The notes under the pieces: generated by a model
Databases searched by the model: none
Told to the model about the DNA's origin: nothing
Seen by the model: only the letters and a program-made list of their open reading frames with translations
Origin: Vitrella brassicaformis CCMP3155
Taxonomy: Eukaryota; Protista; Chromerida
NCBI GenBank assembly: GCA_001179505.1
Contig: CDMY01000407.1
Span: 1 to 64,000 of the forward strand
Length of the DNA stretch: 64,000 nucleotides
Direction: 5' to 3'
In this document: one piece after another, positions 46,384 through 54,406 of the stretch
Numbering within the stretch: position 1 is the stretch's first letter
How the letters are laid out: every line of letters begins with the position of its first letter
Translations under genes and position numbers: made by a program

Positions 46384-48447
46384 CTACGCGTCGATCTGCT
46401 TGGCCTCGTCGTGCATCTCGCCGTGCATGGTGGTGGCGAGGTGTGCCTTGAGCTGTTTGATGAGCGGGAGAGGGCTCCGGTTGGACTTCTTCATGTCGGT
46501 GATGGTCTCGATGGCCGTCCGGGCGAAGTCGGCGTCCTCGTGAGCTATCCTGTCCAGTCTCCTGTTGCGCATGAGACACAGACACCATGTTAGTGTCAAT
46601 CCATGTGTGTACGAGCCTTGCAGATCAGATAGACTCCACTCCCACTCACTTCTGCATGCTGGCACGCTCATCGTCTTTCGCTTTCTGAACAGCGGCACAA
46701 CACAAACAAGACAGACAACTGCCCTTCCTGCTGTGCTGACGGGCGACACACGGCAATCAGTCAATACAAGCGAGACCCACCTTACCTGGACTTCCCAGGC
46801 CTTCAGCTCTGCCAGCTGTCGGTTGAATGCGGCGAGGTCCTGCAGCTCCTTGAACCGCCGTCTCCGGTCCTCGTCGTCCCGCTCGCACATGGCACTGAAC
46901 GACGAGTGCCAGTGCTGCAACATCCGCTGATCCTCCGCTCTCCGCGCCTCCTCGTTCGCCTGGGCAAAGGACAAGGAAGAGAAGAGCAAGTCTCTTCCCT
47001 GGTTTGTTACAGGCACACTGTGTGTGTGTGTGTGTGTGTCTGTGTGTCTGTGTGTCTGTGTGTCTGTGTGTCTGTGTGTGTGTGTGTGTGTGTTGGCTGC
47101 CTTTTTCATGGCGAGTTGCTGTGCTCTGTGCTCTTCGATCATCTGTCTCTGCAGGCGGGCCTGCTCCTCTTTGGCCATGAATTTGGCGTCCTCCTTGGCC
47201 TTGAACTCTGCTGCCTGATCGTTTGATGAATGAGAGAAAGAGGGGATGTTTTGGCTTGTTAGTTTCGTCCTCACCTCCCTCTCAGCTCTTGTCTCGTCAG
47301 CCTCATGAATGGCCTGCAGCAGTCTGGCCTGTTCGTCGATCATCCTCTGCCTGGTGGCCAGCTTGGCGTTGAAGATCTCCTCGGACCTCTTCTGCATCTT
47401 CTCCTGCATCTCCTCCTTCCGCTTGGCCCAGCCGGAGATGGCGGCGTCCTGCTCGGCCTCCACCTGACGCTCGCGCTGCTTGAGCTCCTCAAAGTACTTG
47501 TTGGACTTGACCGTCTCTTCCAAGGTTTTCTGCGCCATCTCGCGGCGCTTGACCTCGGCGGTGCGCTCGGCGATGATGTCCTCCTCGGCCTTCTTCTTGA
47601 GCATCTCGCCCTGGAGGATCTCATCCTGGATCTCTTGCAGACGCCTGCGCTTCATTTCTTCCAGCTGCTCGGCGCGCTCCTTCTGTGTCTCGGACACCTT
47701 CTTCTCCCGCTCTAGGGACTCGGCAACCTCCCTCTCAAGCGCTCGGCGATACGCCTGCAGCGCATACACAACAAATTGATGGTCATGTGTGTTGCCTGCA
47801 TGCCGTCTGTCATCGACCTGCTGTTCTTGCTCGAGGTGGAAGGCCTCCCTTTGTTTCTCGAGCGCACCGAGCTCCTCCTTGAGCGTTCGCTCCTCCTCCC
47901 AGTCAGTGTGGATGTCTGTGAGCATGGCGTTGCCCTGGAAAGCCCTGAAGTGCTCGCCGTGCTGCCGAGACAGCTCCAGGGCCCGGCCGATGGCCTTCTT
48001 CTTGAGCTCCTTCTGGTAGGCAGCCTCCTCGTTGTCCACCGCCTTTGCAAACCAACCCATTACAGACAGACAGACACCGTGCTGCTCGTGCTCCCTGGGC
48101 ATGATTGGCTCGTAACACGTGTGTGCTGAGTGTGCTGACCTGCTTGGCTGCCTCCTCGTCTGCCAGGCGCTTCTTTCGCATCTCTATCTTCAGTCTTCGC
48201 GCACCTGAAAATAGAGGAAGGAACGAAGGCATATTGAAGGGCCCCTGGCCATTTGGCGATGGTTCGGCTCACCCTGCAGCGTGTTTGACCACCGCGAGGC
48301 CCTCTCCTGCGACTTTTTGTGGAGTGCGAGGCGGTCTTCGGTGCCGTCGTCCTTGCTGTCCTCAGCAAGGGACGAACGGGCCCTCATTTTCTCCAGCTCA
48401 CTGGCGCATATCACCATCTGTGTGTTTGCAGCTTTGAGCTCCGCCAT
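46384..48447 (-). CDS. Coiled-coil cilia/flagella-associated protein, CFAP210/CCDC173-like
   Basis: LHKKSQERASRWSNTLQG|ARRLKIE...DNEEAAYQKELKKKAIGRA fits my recollection of the CFAP210 N-terminal signature, followed by a long E/K/R-rich coiled coil. Confidence 0.7.
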
Positions 48448-48738
48448 TTCACGACGCGGGACGGCTGCCCCCGCGAGCTTAGCCGCGAGATGTGGGGGTG
48501 CCCCCTTCGTGGTGCACGTCCGGAGACGGAGGTGTCGGCCATTGCTCCGCCGTCGGTCGGTGCCTTGCCCAGATCTGAGGCTGGGAGAAGAGGAGGGAAG
48601 TTTACGTCCTCAGGAGATCATTCGCCGTGAAACCGTTACTCGTCGAGATCTGTGCATTTTCAAGGCAGGGAGGTCAAGGACGCACAGACTGTCGACTGGT
48701 CGCCTCGCAGCTCAGCGGTGACTTTCTGAGGTCTGGAA

Positions 48739-50071
48739 ATGAAGGCAGTCTGTGCGGTGCTGGCGTGCCTTTTGTCCGCCGCCGTGGCGGACCGATCTGC
48801 TTTCGTCCCTGCACTCAATGTCAGAAGGTAGGTAACGCATGAATCAGAGGCGGTATCCATCTGTGTGTCCAGTCAATAATCACATTCGTGATGGCATGGT
48901 TTGTCACGGGTGCTGCAGGTCGACGAGTGTCCCACGGCCCTCTGAGCAGCTCAGAATGTCCGCCAGCGACAGCGAGGGGTCCAATGCGCTCCTCGAGAGA
49001 GCCGGCAAGGTGCTGGGACCCGCCCTTGCTGCAGGAGCGCTCGGTGGCCTGATGGCCACGCAGCCAGCCGAGGCAGCTCCTGAGCGCCTTGTGCCATGCG
49101 CCGAGAGCAAGAAATTCGCCGCCAAGATGAAGGCGCAGGCAAGCAGACCACCACACTCGGCATTTGGTTGTGGCGTTGTTCACTGCAATGTGTGTCATCG
49201 TGATTCAGGAGAAGGGTCTTGAGGCTCGTCTGAAGAAGTACACGCCCGAGTCGCAGGGCGCGGCGCTGCTCAACGGCAGGCTGGAGGAGACCAAGACGCG
49301 CGCAGAGCGGTACAAGGCATCAAACCTCCTCTGCGGAAAGGTGGGTGGCTGTTGATTGACAATAATGAATGTGCTGTGTGTGGTTTTCAATCACTCGTCG
49401 GCTTCTATGTGTATCACGACGTGTGTGGTTCATTCAGGACGGTCTGCCCCATTTGATTGTGGACGTGAGGGGTCAGCATGCGGGTGAGTTCGCCGCCCCG
49501 GGTCTGCTCTTCCTTTACATTGCCGGCTGGATCGGCTGGGCGGGCCGCTCATACCTCAACGGTGTGCAGCTCGCCAGCAGCAACCCTGAGAGCAAGGAAA
49601 TCGTCCTCGACCTGCCTTTCGCTCTCCAGGTGCGATGCATTACCAACACAAACAGCATCACACGCGAAAGCGCCTATGTGTCTGTGTGACTGCACTGTGT
49701 ATGGTGTGGTGTGCAGGTGATGACTCGTTCGGCCACATGGCCATTCCAGGCTTTCGACGAGGCGTTCGGCAAGGGCGAGACGCCCGTGCCTTCGACGAAC
49801 TTCGACAACGCGCCCAACTACATCAGGTTCCTCGGTGTGTCGTCAGTGGCACTGACCATCTGGATGTCCCTCACCGCCGCCATGCTCATCCTCCTCAACA
49901 AGGCCTACCCAGGACTGCTCTTCTTCCCTGACCGTAAGTGACCATCGACCCATGCATCCATCAGTGATTCGATTGATGTGTGCACACCCAATGACGGTTT
50001 TGCTGTCGCCTTGTGTGTCTCTGGTGTGTGCAGTGAGCACCGACCTCTTCTCCCCTTTCTCTGGGAAGTAA
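48739..50071 (+). CDS. psaF: Nucleus-encoded photosystem I subunit III (PsaF) with tripartite targeting and a C-terminal PsaJ-like extension; 6 exons
   Basis: Exons are 48739-48827, 48919-49138, 49209-49340, 49438-49629, 49717-49933 and 50034-50071. It has a signal peptide plus SAFVP and a lumen signal ending AEA. PsaF motifs: [15 protein letters not shown]|[36 protein letters not shown] and KEIVLDLP. Confidence 0.95.
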
Positions 50072-51988
50072 TCAAGCAAGCCGGCACTACTGGGTGGGTG
50101 GGGCAGGCAGCATCTGAGGCGGCGCCGTTAGAGTGTGTGCTGACTCTCGATCTGGCAGCCAGTGCACTCCCTGACGGCTACGCAGCTGAGGCTGTCTTTC
50201 TCGCCCGTCCTTGGCCACAAGTGTTGCTTGCCGTCTTAGCGCCGTGTCATTTGACGTGTAGAGAGGAGGACAAGACGCGGCCTGGGGCGTGATCGATGTC
50301 ATGTGATGTGACGTTGGATGGATGAGTGAGTAGTTTGGGCTTTCTTGGTTGGTGTGGTGCATGCATGCTTGGATGCATCGGCTGACCGACAGACAGACAC
50401 CCATGTGCAATACCATCTCTGTCGAATTTTTGTCTGTGGTGTCTGTGGCTGGCCTTACAGCCAAACGGTCGGTCACCGCAGGAATGCAGCCACTCATCGA
50501 CAGTACACACGGACGCATTGGGCTTCCGTTTGTGGGCTTTGAGCCTATTCTGCAAGCGGTGCTCAATGCTCCTTCTGACGGAAGACTCGAATCACTACTC
50601 AGCACCGAAGGTGGTCCAAACAACGGTCTCTCTACCAGCCATCATCTGGCTCTTACACAACAAAGTGCAGCCCGCGATTGATTGTCCACCAGACATCGAT
50701 CGCCACACACAGATACCCAGCTGCAGCCAGAGACACGGACTGCAGCCATACACATGCCAAGCAAAGAATCGACAGACGAGACGAGGCTTTTGCTGCTGCT
50801 GCATCATGTTCTGACCTGCACACCCACCACAGACAGCAGAGCAGTCACACATGTCTGTCTGTCTGTCTGTCTGTCTGTCGGGTGTTGCATGCCTTTCCCG
50901 CCTCCCTCGCTGACCATAGGCACCATAACGGAGGGAGAGCGTGACAGATCTGTAGGCAGAACAACAGACGTACGTATGATGCGTCGACACATCCTGCATG
51001 CCTTTCTTCTCTCTCGCCAGCCAGGCAGGCGAAGCTGGCGTGGCCTGCGCCAGCTCCTGGCCACCACATGTGCATGCGCGTCTGTCTGCATATATCAGGC
51101 ATGCTACAAACACATTCTTCTGCACGGTGTGTGCACATACTATCCCCCGTACGGTACGCCCTCTGCATGTCGTGGGGGGACTTCTCCAGCCACTGCGCAT
51201 CAGCGGATGAATCTCATTCCGATTCAAAGGCCGACGCCACCGACACCTCCACCGTCTCTCGATAGCACCAAAAACGACCGCGCAATGGCTGATGCCATCT
51301 GGATGTGCGTGTGGTGCTTGGGGCGGACACGTGTGCTGAGGGGCAGCCCCGCAGGCAGCCAGACAGGTCGACCTGAGCGAGGGTCGATGGGAGACAGAGA
51401 GAGAGTGCTGTGGGTGTGGCTGTGGGTGTCATGGCTGTGTTGTGAGTGTTTTGTGTGTCGCGTACCTGAGGTATGTCGTCCTCATGGACCCATCTGATGC
51501 CCCATCCTCACTCGGCAACCCGATAGATCGCCAGACACTCACCACGACCAGCATGCTTCCACCACCCTACATACACACACACACGCACACACACACACAC
51601 ACACAGGGACCGATGAACCAATCAATGACCACAGCAATGGCTGCTGTGTGCTGACCAGCTGGCGGCAGTTTGCGACGAGAAGACAGGCGGTGAAGGCAGC
51701 AGAAGACAAAACACACAAGGCCTGCCTGCCTTTATGTATGCGGCAGTGGACGCGAGAAACACAGGCACATTGATTGCAGACAGTCAGACACACATGGGCA
51801 GGTAGGGTACACGCTCCCATGCATCGCATCGCATCGCATCGCATCGCATCGATTGTCAATCCATCACATCGATCGCACCGGAACTCACATAGCTATGTTT
51901 TCCCAACTCATGATACATGGATGCATGGAGTGCAGTGTAAAGTCACACCACCGATAGATACAACTGAATAAACCCCGCCGGCCAGACC

Positions 51989-52884: not shown

Positions 52885-53514
52885 TTTGTTCGTTCACTCT
52901 CCCTCGAGCTTCTCTGTCGCAGCGCTGCTCACCATGAATGCCTGCAGCTTGGCCAGCCCTGGATGGGAGGACGGGAAGAGGATAGAGCCAATCATCCGCG
53001 TGGACAGTCGGGTGGCGCAATCGACTGTTGCAATCGTTTACACGAAGCATGGCAATTGACTTGAGCAAGCATCCGCGTGAGTGCGCGTGCGCGTGCGCGT
53101 GCGCGAGTGCGTGTGTGTGCAGCCAAAGAAGTGCGTTTCGGAAACATTCGAATAACATGCCCTACATTCTACAGCTGTGTCCACGCATGCAGACAAGGAA
53201 AGTGAACATGTAAGGACACACCTTGTAAGTGAGTAAGTAATGGTGGGCGCATGACTCTTCCCCCGCTACGGCCACCATTATGCAAAATGCCATGGGTGAA
53301 TGCGTATCTAATAGATAACGTCAATGAATTATCGGCTTGGCATACATCGCGGGTGTCTGGCAAAGGGACGCCATCGTGACTGACGGAAAAACACCCAAAA
53401 ACACGCACGTACACGCGCGCATTGCCCGTCCCCTCTTCACAAATAGTGCAACAGCGACACGGCACCCGTCCCACCCTGCCCCGCCCCGTCGGCTGGTCGT
53501 GTGTGCATCAATCA

Positions 53515-54406
53515 CTATGCCCCTCTCTCCTCCGACTGCAAACATCACGCACACAGAGCCGTGAGGGCGAGGCCACCCACGGTGCTTCATGTGGATCCTG
53601 ATATGCTCACGTACCTGGCCGGCCCCTCTGATTTGATCAGGTACGTTGAGCTGTCCGCCGTCCTTGCCCAAGGCGGCGAGCACAATCATGATGACGATAG
53701 TGAGGCAGATGAGCCCGCACAGCATCTGGATGCACCGGTCCGACACGGCGTTGCGGGCGATGGTCCGCATGGTGGCCTTGGCGCGTGTCAGGTTGTTCTC
53801 GATGTCGTGCATCTGGTCGTGGATGCGCGCCATCTGGTCCGTCTGCTGATCCAGCCGCTGGACCACCTGCTGACCCACCTGCTCAGCGTCACCTGAACCA
53901 AACCAAACCGGACATTTAAATGAGTGTTGTGAGTGCTGTGTGCTATCTATCTGCCTCGTGTGCTGTGCAAATCAATCCGCACCGATCATCCGCTTCGTGC
54001 GGTCGAGTGACTGCTGTGTCTTGTCCTGCACCCTGTCGCCCGTGTCGATGATCTGCTGGGCGTTCATCTGGTCCACGTCTATGACCTCCTCCCCCACATC
54101 CACAGCGCCGCCCGTGAGCTGCTCCCGGTCCAGCTCGTTCTTCTTCCACTCCAACTGGTTGAGCAGCATCTTGAAGTCCCGCATCCGCTCGTCCAGGTTG
54201 GCCTTGTGCTGCCGGGCGTCCTCTGGTGCCAGGCTGCGCATCTCCAGCTGGTAGGCCTCGCGCGCCGTGCGGACCTGCTGGGCGATGAAGTCGCAGTCCT
54301 GGATGCGGGACCGACGCTGGCTCTTGTCCGCCTGCGATACGCTCTCGATGGCATCACGCAGCTCGTCCAGGAGCTTCAACAGCTCCCGGGACTGGCCTTC
54401 CGCCAT
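53515..54406 (-). CDS. NPSN: Qb-SNARE of the NPSN (novel plant SNARE-like) type with a C-terminal TM helix
   Basis: It has an N-terminal helical bundle, then the SNARE motif ...LDQQTDQMARIHDQMHDIENNLTRAKATMRTIARNAVSDRCI, followed by the TM segment MLCGLICLTIVIMIVLAAL. Confidence 0.8.

What the first reader, a model, noticed from the sequence alone, without database searches (positions are those of the whole stretch)
49717..50071. Nuclear PsaF continues in frame into a PsaJ-like helix: an apparent PsaF-PsaJ fusion protein
Seen in the sequence: after the normal PsaF C-terminal region ([13 protein letters not shown]...), exon 5 has no stop. It runs on as [39 protein letters not shown]|[12 protein letters not shown]. 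Established knowledge: PsaJ is an approximately 40-aa single-helix subunit of the form xxYLSTAPVLxTLWxxxTAGxLIEINRFFPDxLxF, and psaF-psaJ are adjacent in that order in cyanobacteria and red plastids. Cyanophages carry a fusion in the opposite J-F order. The extension aligns position by position with PsaJ (FL..., V..T.W...TA..LI..N...P..L.F). Inference: the psaF-psaJ pair moved to the nucleus together and fused, so one tripartite presequence imports both subunits. A gene survey could score such a PsaJ as lost. I cannot confirm whether this has been reported.
Basis: partly seen in the sequence, partly recalled or inferred. Interest (0 to 1): 0.9.

Follow-up and report, generated by a model that had tools for sequence, protein, structure and literature searches.

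The report
Vitrella nuclear PsaF–PsaJ fusion gene

Summary
The window is Vitrella brassicaformis CCMP3155 nuclear DNA. A six-exon gene (48739-50071, + strand) encodes a 295-aa protein identical to the public prediction.

- **Domains:** residues 74-228 are PsaF (Pfam 181.5 bits). Residues 248-279 are a true PsaJ domain (30.9 bits in the whole protein, 36.7 bits alone, gathering cut-off 22.4). They carry all 8 residues that are invariant in 20 cyanobacterial PsaJ.
- **Junction:** both domains lie in exon 5 with no stop or intron between them. The junction has no added spacer: the PsaF tail runs to P244 and PsaJ begins at N245.
- **Transcript:** a 1324-nt RNA contig joins all six exons exactly, including 49933/50034.
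- **Gene order:** the fusion is collinear with the cyanobacterial psaF-psaJ gene pair, which I found in 77 of 80 fetched loci.
- **Chromera:** the protein aligns through the junction with Chromera velia PsaF (PDB 9HYU chain F). There, cryo-EM placed this C-terminus in the PsaJ site (Nat Commun, Dec 2025).

Three points are new. Vitrella shares the junction, which suggests one ancestral fusion. Its PsaJ part passes the Pfam threshold, whereas the Chromera part does not (18.2 bits). A 2017 survey scored psaJ as lost in Vitrella. The same stretch was also noted elsewhere in this scan. Interest is modest.

The parts
48670..48738 (+). 5' UTR (start of the RNA contig)
   Evidence: The RNA contig in run X1 begins at 48670.
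48739..48827 (+). Exon 1: start codon, ER-type signal peptide (aa 1-16, ...AAVA) and the start of the transit peptide
   Evidence: Hydrophobic segment at aa 1-26 and the ORF. RNA joint 48827/48919.
48919..49138 (+). Exon 2: transit peptide, thylakoid-transfer hydrophobic domain (aa about 52-75, ending AEA) and the start of mature PsaF (about aa 83). A GC-AG intron follows.
   Evidence: AF2 helix at 52-75 and low pLDDT at 18-49. Solved PsaF chains align from model residue 83. The RNA joint fits the GC..AG intron 49139-49208.
49209..49340 (+). Exon 3: lumenal helices of PsaF
   Evidence: Pfam PF02507, 33.2 bits on this exon alone. RNA joints.
49438..49629 (+). Exon 4: PsaF core with its transmembrane helix (aa 165-183)
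   Evidence: Pfam PF02507, 91 bits. Hydropathy.
49717..49815 (+). Exon 5, first part: last PsaF helix and the stromal C-terminal tail of PsaF (aa 212-244, ending ...FDNAP, aligned to the canonical ...ITVSP(R) end)
   Evidence: Alignment A1 with 12 PsaF of 172-189 aa.
49816..49933 (+). Exon 5, second part: PsaJ domain (aa 245-284; [39 protein letters not shown]), a single transmembrane helix
   Evidence: Pfam PF01701, 36.7 bits against a cut-off of 22.4. PDB PsaJ chains match. All 8 residues invariant in 20 cyanobacterial PsaJ are present. AF2 helix at 245-274.
49934..50033 (+). Intron 5 (GT..AG, phase 1, 100 nt). If it were retained, the ORF would end ...FFPDRK*.
   Evidence: The 49933/50034 joint appears in three RNA data sets. 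Read-through translation.
50034..50071 (+). Exon 6 coding part: 12-aa lumenal tail ([12 protein letters not shown]) beyond the PsaJ domain, then the stop codon
50072..50300 (+). 3' UTR. The RNA contig runs on about 138 nt beyond 50300.
   Evidence: X1 record positions 139-405 lie on 50034-50300, which leaves 138 nt further on.

Best explanation
This is the nuclear psaF gene of Vitrella brassicaformis. It carries the former plastid gene psaJ fused in frame to its 3' end.

Shown here:
- One spliced mRNA encodes a 295-aa precursor.
- A complete PsaF domain (mature part from about aa 83 to P244) runs straight into a PsaJ domain (N245 to about D284) with no added linker.
- The PsaJ domain is followed by a 12-aa tail encoded by a small last exon.

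Inferred:
- An N-terminal three-part presequence (ER signal peptide, transit peptide, thylakoid-transfer domain) brings the whole chain to the thylakoid.
- The N-terminal domain of PsaF sits in the lumen. Its helix crosses to the stroma, and its natural stromal tail serves as the connector. The PsaJ helix then crosses back to the lumen. This is the topology that separate PsaF and PsaJ have in every solved PSI.
- The PsaJ helix therefore occupies the normal PsaJ site beside PsaF, as cryo-EM showed for the orthologous Chromera velia PsaF (PDB 9HYU).
- The chain probably stays uncleaved.
- The junction motif is shared with Chromera (FDxxP, one residue, then xIxxxG...LTIW...FFPD). This points to a single fusion in a common ancestor of both chromerids. 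The fusion was made by loss of the psaF stop codon, the spacer and the first psaJ codons from an adjacent psaF-psaJ pair.
For: - **Gene model and identity:** the spliced model is identical to P0001, named Vitrella brassicaformis CCMP3155, with precomputed Pfam PF02507 + PF01701.
- **Transcript:** one 1324-nt RNA contig covers all six exons with the five introns removed. Two other data sets, one of them a sediment metatranscriptome, show the 49933/50034 joint.
- **Domains:** PsaF scores 181.5 bits over aa 74-228, and PsaJ 30.9 bits over aa 248-279 against a cut-off of 22.4. The PsaJ part alone scores 36.7 bits.
- **Solved structures by sequence:** PDB PsaJ chains match at E down to 3.2e-7. All 8 columns invariant in 20 cyanobacterial PsaJ are kept.
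- **Fold:** model residues 83-229 superpose on solved PsaF chains at Z about 12. A separate helix is predicted at 245-274.
- **Junction:** the PsaF tail aligns to the canonical ...ITVSPR end up to P244.
- **Chromera:** 9hyu_F aligns collinearly across the junction, E 4.5e-11. 9HYU is the C. velia PSI structure, in which the PsaF C-terminus fills the PsaJ site.
- **Gene order:** psaJ lies directly downstream of psaF in 77 of 80 cyanobacterial loci.
Against: - There is no protein-level evidence for Vitrella. PsaF was not among the Vitrella proteins identified by mass spectrometry in PMC5643376.
- Cleavage between the two domains after import is not excluded.
- The NCBIfam PsaJ equivalog model scores only 28.6-31.7 bits against a cut-off of 69.
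- Some well-conserved PsaJ residues are changed. The near-invariant A-P of STAP is S-S, and the near-invariant Asp of P-D is Gly. The Glu of LIE(F)N, which is not in the invariant lists, is Leu.
- The AF2 model does not fix the packing of the PsaJ helix against PsaF (pTM 0.43).
- I could not scan the rest of the Vitrella nuclear and plastid genomes for a free-standing psaJ.
Confidence: 0.88

Rival explanations
1. The fused precursor is only an import vehicle. After it reaches the thylakoid it is cut near residue 244/245 into separate PsaF and PsaJ subunits, as happens with the polyprotein precursors of some nucleus-encoded plastid proteins in dinoflagellates and Euglena.
For: Dinoflagellate PSI has a separate PsaJ chain with a stromal N-terminal extension (PMC10873603 and PMC10944487). 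No Vitrella PsaF peptide data exist.
Against: In the Chromera orthologue, cryo-EM assigned the chain in the PsaJ position to the PsaF C-terminus, connected through about 20 linking residues. The junction is conserved and collinear between the two species. There is no repeated unit and no recognisable processing motif at the junction.
Confidence: 0.08
2. The extension is a fortuitous hydrophobic tail or a gene-model artefact (intron read-through, or a chimera of two neighbouring genes), not a homologue of PsaJ.
For: PsaJ is short and hydrophobic, so weak matches can arise by chance. Two unrelated repeat proteins did hit the 72-aa query in the 1.84-billion-protein search.
Against: The Pfam score is above the curated cut-off, at E 5.9e-9. 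PDB PsaJ chains match over their full length. All 8 invariant PsaJ residues are present in register. Both domains sit in one exon, and RNA contigs from independent studies are continuous across it.
Confidence: 0.02
3. Vitrella and Chromera fused psaF and psaJ independently (convergence favoured by gene adjacency), not once in a common ancestor.
For: The adjacent same-strand psaF-psaJ arrangement is widespread. In 31 of the 80 cyanobacterial loci fetched, only the psaF stop codon separates the two in-frame ORFs, so such fusions are easy to make. The cyanophage J-F fusion shows that this pair can fuse more than once.
Against: Both chromerid proteins share the same junction with no added spacer, and conserved residues around it: VP..x..FD..P.xI...G. 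Cyanobacterial spacers would add 4-20 residues there.
Confidence: 0.1

Closest known systems
Chromera velia PsaF with a PsaJ-like C-terminus (PDB 9HYU chain F; Nat Commun 2025, PMC12830998)
   Same: Both are nucleus-encoded PsaF proteins followed in the same chain by a PsaJ-type transmembrane helix, in the same F-to-J order. They align collinearly through the junction (E 4.5e-11). In Chromera the helix occupies the PsaJ site in PSI.
   Different: The Vitrella PsaJ part is much closer to canonical PsaJ. It keeps the ...[12 protein letters not shown] end and passes the Pfam cut-off (30.9-36.7 bits). The Chromera part has a 6-residue gap there and scores 18.2 bits, below the cut-off. The precursor is shorter (295 aa against 326 aa) and so is the tail after the domain. 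No structure or proteomics exists for Vitrella.
Separate psaF and psaJ genes of cyanobacteria and red-lineage plastids (adjacent pair, F then J)
   Same: The order and orientation are the same, and both domains are complete. The fused protein is collinear with the gene pair in 77 of 80 cyanobacterial loci.
   Different: In those genomes there are two polypeptides, separated by a stop codon and a spacer. Here there is one nuclear ORF with introns, a targeting presequence and no spacer-derived residues.
Cyanophage PsaJF fusion (for example Prochlorococcus phage P-TIM68; engineered version in PDB 4L6V)
   Same: It is a natural covalent fusion of the same two PSI subunits.
   Different: The order is the opposite (J then F), so the link is on the lumenal side and not the stromal side. 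It is viral and prokaryotic, with no presequence or introns.
Dinoflagellate PsaJ (Symbiodinium, Amphidinium PSI-AcpPCI structures)
   Same: It comes from a related alveolate lineage with a red-derived plastid, and PsaJ has extra stromal sequence at its N-terminus.
   Different: PsaJ is a separate chain there. It was too diverged for the Vitrella C-terminus to match at E up to 10.

Membership tests
PsaF (PSI subunit III, Pfam PF02507) | Profile match above the curated cut-off over most of the domain | tested here: met
   181.5 bits against a cut-off of 27; aa 74-228 on profile positions 11-163 of 172.
PsaF (PSI subunit III, Pfam PF02507) | PsaF fold: lumenal helical domain plus membrane helices | tested here: met
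   AF2 model residues 83-229 align to more than 50 solved PsaF chains, Z 10.8-12.3, 140-147 residues.
PsaJ (PSI subunit IX, Pfam PF01701) | Profile match above the curated cut-off | tested here: met
   36.7 bits alone and 30.9 bits within the whole protein, against a cut-off of 22.4; profile positions 5/6-37 of 37.
PsaJ (PSI subunit IX, Pfam PF01701) | Conserved residues of the single helix and the N..(F/Y)P..L..P end | tested here: met
   All 8 columns invariant in 20 cyanobacterial PsaJ (W, T, A, I, N, P, L, P) are kept. The near-invariant A-P and Asp are changed to S-S and Gly. The Glu of LIE(F)N, which is not invariant, is Leu.
PsaJ (PSI subunit IX, Pfam PF01701) | NCBIfam equivalog NF002743 trusted cut-off | tested here: not met
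   28.6-31.7 bits against a cut-off of 69. That model is tuned to bacterial full-length PsaJ, so it is the only family hit but lies below the cut-off.
PsaJ (PSI subunit IX, Pfam PF01701) | One transmembrane helix placed beside PsaF at the PSI periphery | not testable with these tools
   A helix at 245-274 and a hydrophobic segment at 247-281 are predicted. Placement in PSI is known only for the Chromera orthologue.
Chromerid PsaF-PsaJ fusion (as in PDB 9HYU chain F) | One chain in the order F then J, collinear with the Chromera protein across the junction | tested here: met
   9hyu_F residues 217-299 align to Vitrella aa 200-284, E 4.5e-11, with shared VP..FD..P.xI...G..LTIW...FFPD. One exon and one mRNA.
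Cyanophage PsaJF fusion | Order J then F | tested here: not met
   The order here is F then J. The phage psaJF matches only the PsaF part, aa 164-244.

The most novel reading that the evidence does not exclude
The fusion is older than the chromerids. It arose once, from the adjacent plastid psaF-psaJ pair, before or during transfer to the nucleus in an ancestor of the apicomplexan/chrompodellid line, or even of all myzozoans. On this reading the separate dinoflagellate PsaJ, with its roughly 31-residue stromal N-terminal extension, is a secondary split that kept part of the old PsaF tail. Vitrella would then preserve the least-changed version of an ancient two-in-one PSI subunit.
Probability: 0.12. 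Interest if true: 0.55.

Novelty: new member of a known kind. Interest (0 to 1): 0.3.

Why it matters
The finding corrects the record for Vitrella. psaJ was scored as lost in both chromerids in the 2017 photosystem survey, but it is present, hidden in psaF.

It also strengthens the gene-fusion reading of the Chromera cryo-EM structure. That reading rested on position in the map and about 30% similarity to a dinoflagellate PsaJ. Vitrella supplies a PsaJ moiety that passes curated profile thresholds and has the same junction.

The finding suggests that the fusion dates to a common ancestor of the two chromerid lineages. More generally, surveys of small plastid subunits that look only for free-standing genes will over-count losses.

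It does not reveal a new mechanism. The principle is already published and is visible in public domain annotation.

Tried and rejected
- **Search for other fusions.** A phmmer search of exon 5 (72 aa) against 1.84 billion representative proteins returned only the protein itself plus two tandem-repeat proteins, P0002 and P0003. Those score by summed weak matches and I reject them as chance. Word-based searches with the C-terminal region and with the PsaJ part alone found nothing else. These searches are too insensitive to say the fusion is confined to chromerids; even Chromera was missed.
- **Structure search.** Foldseek and VIA-align on the AF2 model recovered only the PsaF domain. 9hyu_F was not among the rows shown. 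The model's inter-helix packing is unreliable (pTM 0.43), so it gives no structural test of the PsaJ placement.
- **Alignments for folding.** Alignment A2 misaligned PsaF tails onto the PsaJ region, and A4 misplaced the PsaJ rows. I used A3 for folding.
- **Apparent in-frame excess.** psaJ is in frame with psaF in 62 of the 77 cyanobacterial loci where it lies downstream, 15 being out of frame. I do not accept this excess as a finding. The 80 loci were the top of at least 560 ranked by tblastn with the fused query, and in-frame loci gain score from one long alignment through the stop codon.
- **Supplementary files.** None were held for the Chromera paper.

Full report
**What is in the sequence.** Region 48739-50071 on the + strand holds a six-exon gene. 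The exons are 48739-48827, 48919-49138, 49209-49340, 49438-49629, 49717-49933 and 50034-50071. Four introns are GT-AG and one is GC-AG (49139-49208). The phases are 2, 0, 0, 0, 1. The spliced CDS is 888 nt. Its 295-aa product is identical to a public protein, P0001, that sources name as from Vitrella brassicaformis CCMP3155. That protein carries precomputed Pfam domains PF02507 and PF01701. The window's G+C content of 53-63% fits a GC-rich nuclear genome.

**Is it transcribed as read?** I laid public runs on 48600-50300. One 1324-nt RNA contig (run X1) covers 48670-50300 with all five introns removed at the modelled positions. Exon 5 is unbroken, so there is no stop, splice or end between the PsaF part and the PsaJ part. 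A high-depth run from another study (X12) shows the same joints. A sediment metatranscriptome (X3) shows the 49138/49209 and 49933/50034 joints. Contigs drop rare variants, so minor isoforms are not excluded. If intron 5 were retained, the protein would end ...FFPDRK, still with a complete PsaJ domain.

**Is the extension PsaJ?** Yes.
- Pfam PSI_PsaJ scores 36.7 bits (E 5.9e-9) on the 41 residues from 49810-49932, and 30.9 bits within the whole protein. The gathering score is 22.4. The match covers profile positions 5/6 to 37 of 37.
- The last 56 residues match 57 distinct PSI chain sequences in the PDB at E up to 10. Fifty-five are named PsaJ; the other two are Chromera PsaF (9hyu_F) and the engineered J-F fusion (4l6v_F). 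The matches cover the full PsaJ length and come from cyanobacteria, red algae, cryptophytes, diatoms and plants. The best is 7y7b_J at E 3.2e-7.
- I aligned the region with 20 PsaJ proteins translated from cyanobacterial loci. It keeps all eight invariant columns (W, T, A, I, N, P, L, P) in register. Three conserved positions differ. The near-invariant A-P of STAP is S-S, and the near-invariant Asp after the conserved Pro is Gly. The Glu of LIE(F)N, conserved in most but not all of the 20, is Leu.
- The NCBIfam PsaJ equivalog is the only hit in that library, but it lies below its strict cut-off (28.6-31.7 bits against 69).
- Hydropathy and the AlphaFold model give one long helix at 245-274/281.

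**The PsaF part and the junction.** Pfam PSI_PsaF scores 181.5 bits over residues 74-228. Model residues 83-229 superpose on more than 50 solved PsaF chains at Z 10.8-12.3, so the mature protein begins near residue 83. Upstream lie three elements:
- a hydrophobic signal peptide (1-16, ...AAVA);
- a low-confidence Ser/Thr/Arg-rich stretch;
- a hydrophobic helix (52-75) ending in AEA.

This layout is expected for a lumen-facing protein of a complex red-derived plastid.

I aligned the protein with 12 PsaF proteins of 172-189 aa. The Vitrella tail ...PSTNFDNAP lines up with the canonical C-terminal ...ITVSPR, up to the invariant Pro (P244). The PsaJ homology begins at the next residue (N245, encoded at 49816-49818). 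The fusion therefore adds no new linker. The natural stromal tail of PsaF is the connector. Only the last PsaF residue, the stop codon, the spacer and the first two or three PsaJ residues are missing.

From established PSI structures, the PsaF C-terminus and the PsaJ N-terminus are both stromal. The F-then-J order therefore needs no change of topology.

**Relation to the ancestral gene pair.** A scan of bacterial genomes with a PsaF alignment fetched 80 cyanobacterial loci. A PsaJ profile found a PsaJ match in 78 of them. In 77, psaJ lies directly downstream of psaF on the same strand. The Vitrella protein is thus collinear with the classical psaF-psaJ pair. In 62 of these loci psaJ is in the same frame as psaF. 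In 31, only the psaF stop codon separates the two ORFs, so such fusions are mechanically easy. I do not read the in-frame excess as meaningful. The 80 loci were the best of at least 560 ranked by tblastn with the fused query, and in-frame loci gain score from a single alignment through the stop codon. The known cyanophage fusion has the opposite order: psaJF in phage P-TIM68 and the engineered version in PDB 4L6V.

**What is already known.**
- *Chromera cryo-EM.* The structure of Chromera velia PSI (PMC12830998, December 2025, PDB 9HYU) reports that the PsaJ position is filled by a 40-residue C-terminal extension of PsaF. The authors interpret this as a psaF-psaJ gene fusion, citing the cyanobacterial operon and the adjacency in Cyanidioschyzon. 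In that paper's main text, Vitrella appears only in connection with the superoxide dismutase subunit.
- *Direct comparison.* Chromera chain 9hyu_F (326 aa) is the best PDB match to Vitrella residues 196-295 (E 4.5e-11). It aligns collinearly through the junction, with shared VP..FD..P.xI...G..LTIW...FFPD. This argues for one fusion event inherited by both lineages. The Chromera PsaJ-like segment has a six-residue gap before FFPD. It scores only 18.2 bits on Pfam PsaJ, below the cut-off.
- *Earlier surveys.* This difference in score may explain why the 2015 genome paper listed psaJ as present in Vitrella and absent in Chromera (PMC4501334, supplementary files). The 2017 survey scored psaJ as absent from both (PMC5643376). 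Its mass spectrometry did not detect Vitrella PsaF.
- *Dinoflagellates.* Their PSI has a separate PsaJ chain with an extended stromal N-terminus.

**How far the fusion spreads.** This is unresolved. A full phmmer search of exon 5 against 1.84 billion representative proteins found only the protein itself at significant E-values, plus two repeat proteins that are chance hits. The word-based searches found nothing more. These searches also missed Chromera, so they carry little negative weight.

**Verdict.** The order of events (transfer together, then fusion) remains an inference. The phenomenon is already published for the sister chromerid and is visible in public domain annotation of this protein. 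This is therefore a new member of a known kind.

Three things are added here:
- the junction is shared and has no added spacer, which suggests a single ancestral event;
- a profile-level match shows the extension is PsaJ, which was weaker in Chromera;
- the 2017 "psaJ lost in Vitrella" call is corrected.

Another reader of this scan noted the same stretch (s1-235824). That note is not independent evidence.

Noticed in passing
L001-L080 (cyanobacterial psaF-psaJ loci): psaJ is in the same reading frame as psaF in 62 of the 77 loci where it lies downstream (15 are out of frame). In 31, only the psaF stop codon separates the two ORFs, and spacer lengths vary widely. The sample is biased, because ranking with the fused query rewards in-frame loci, so the excess needs an unbiased re-test.
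   Followed up: partly
window 48945-50059: Two sediment metatranscriptome runs (X3, X4) hold this transcript. X3, the one laid on the window, shows it spliced and nearly identical, with one C>T at 49057. Vitrella or a very close relative appears to be transcriptionally active in an environmental sediment sample.
   Followed up: no
window 49139-49208: Intron 2 uses a non-canonical GC donor (GCAAGC...CAG). The RNA joints in three data sets fit it.
   Followed up: yes
window 48062-48075, 50388-50399, 50856-50879: Short (GACA)n / (CTGT)n tetranucleotide runs flank the gene on both sides.
   Followed up: no
window 48830-49216 and 49294-50073: Run X10 (kind unknown) gives contigs that include the introns but stop near exon borders. 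It may be low-coverage DNA or unspliced RNA; I could not tell which.
   Followed up: no
window 46384-48102 (- strand) and 53321-54406 (- strand): The neighbouring ORFs look like a Glu/Lys-rich coiled-coil protein upstream and helical, possibly SNARE-like, ORFs downstream. No psaL was seen next to psaF here, unlike the consecutive gene numbers of psaF and psaL in Chromera (Cvel_23764/23765). I did not test this with a search.
   Followed up: no
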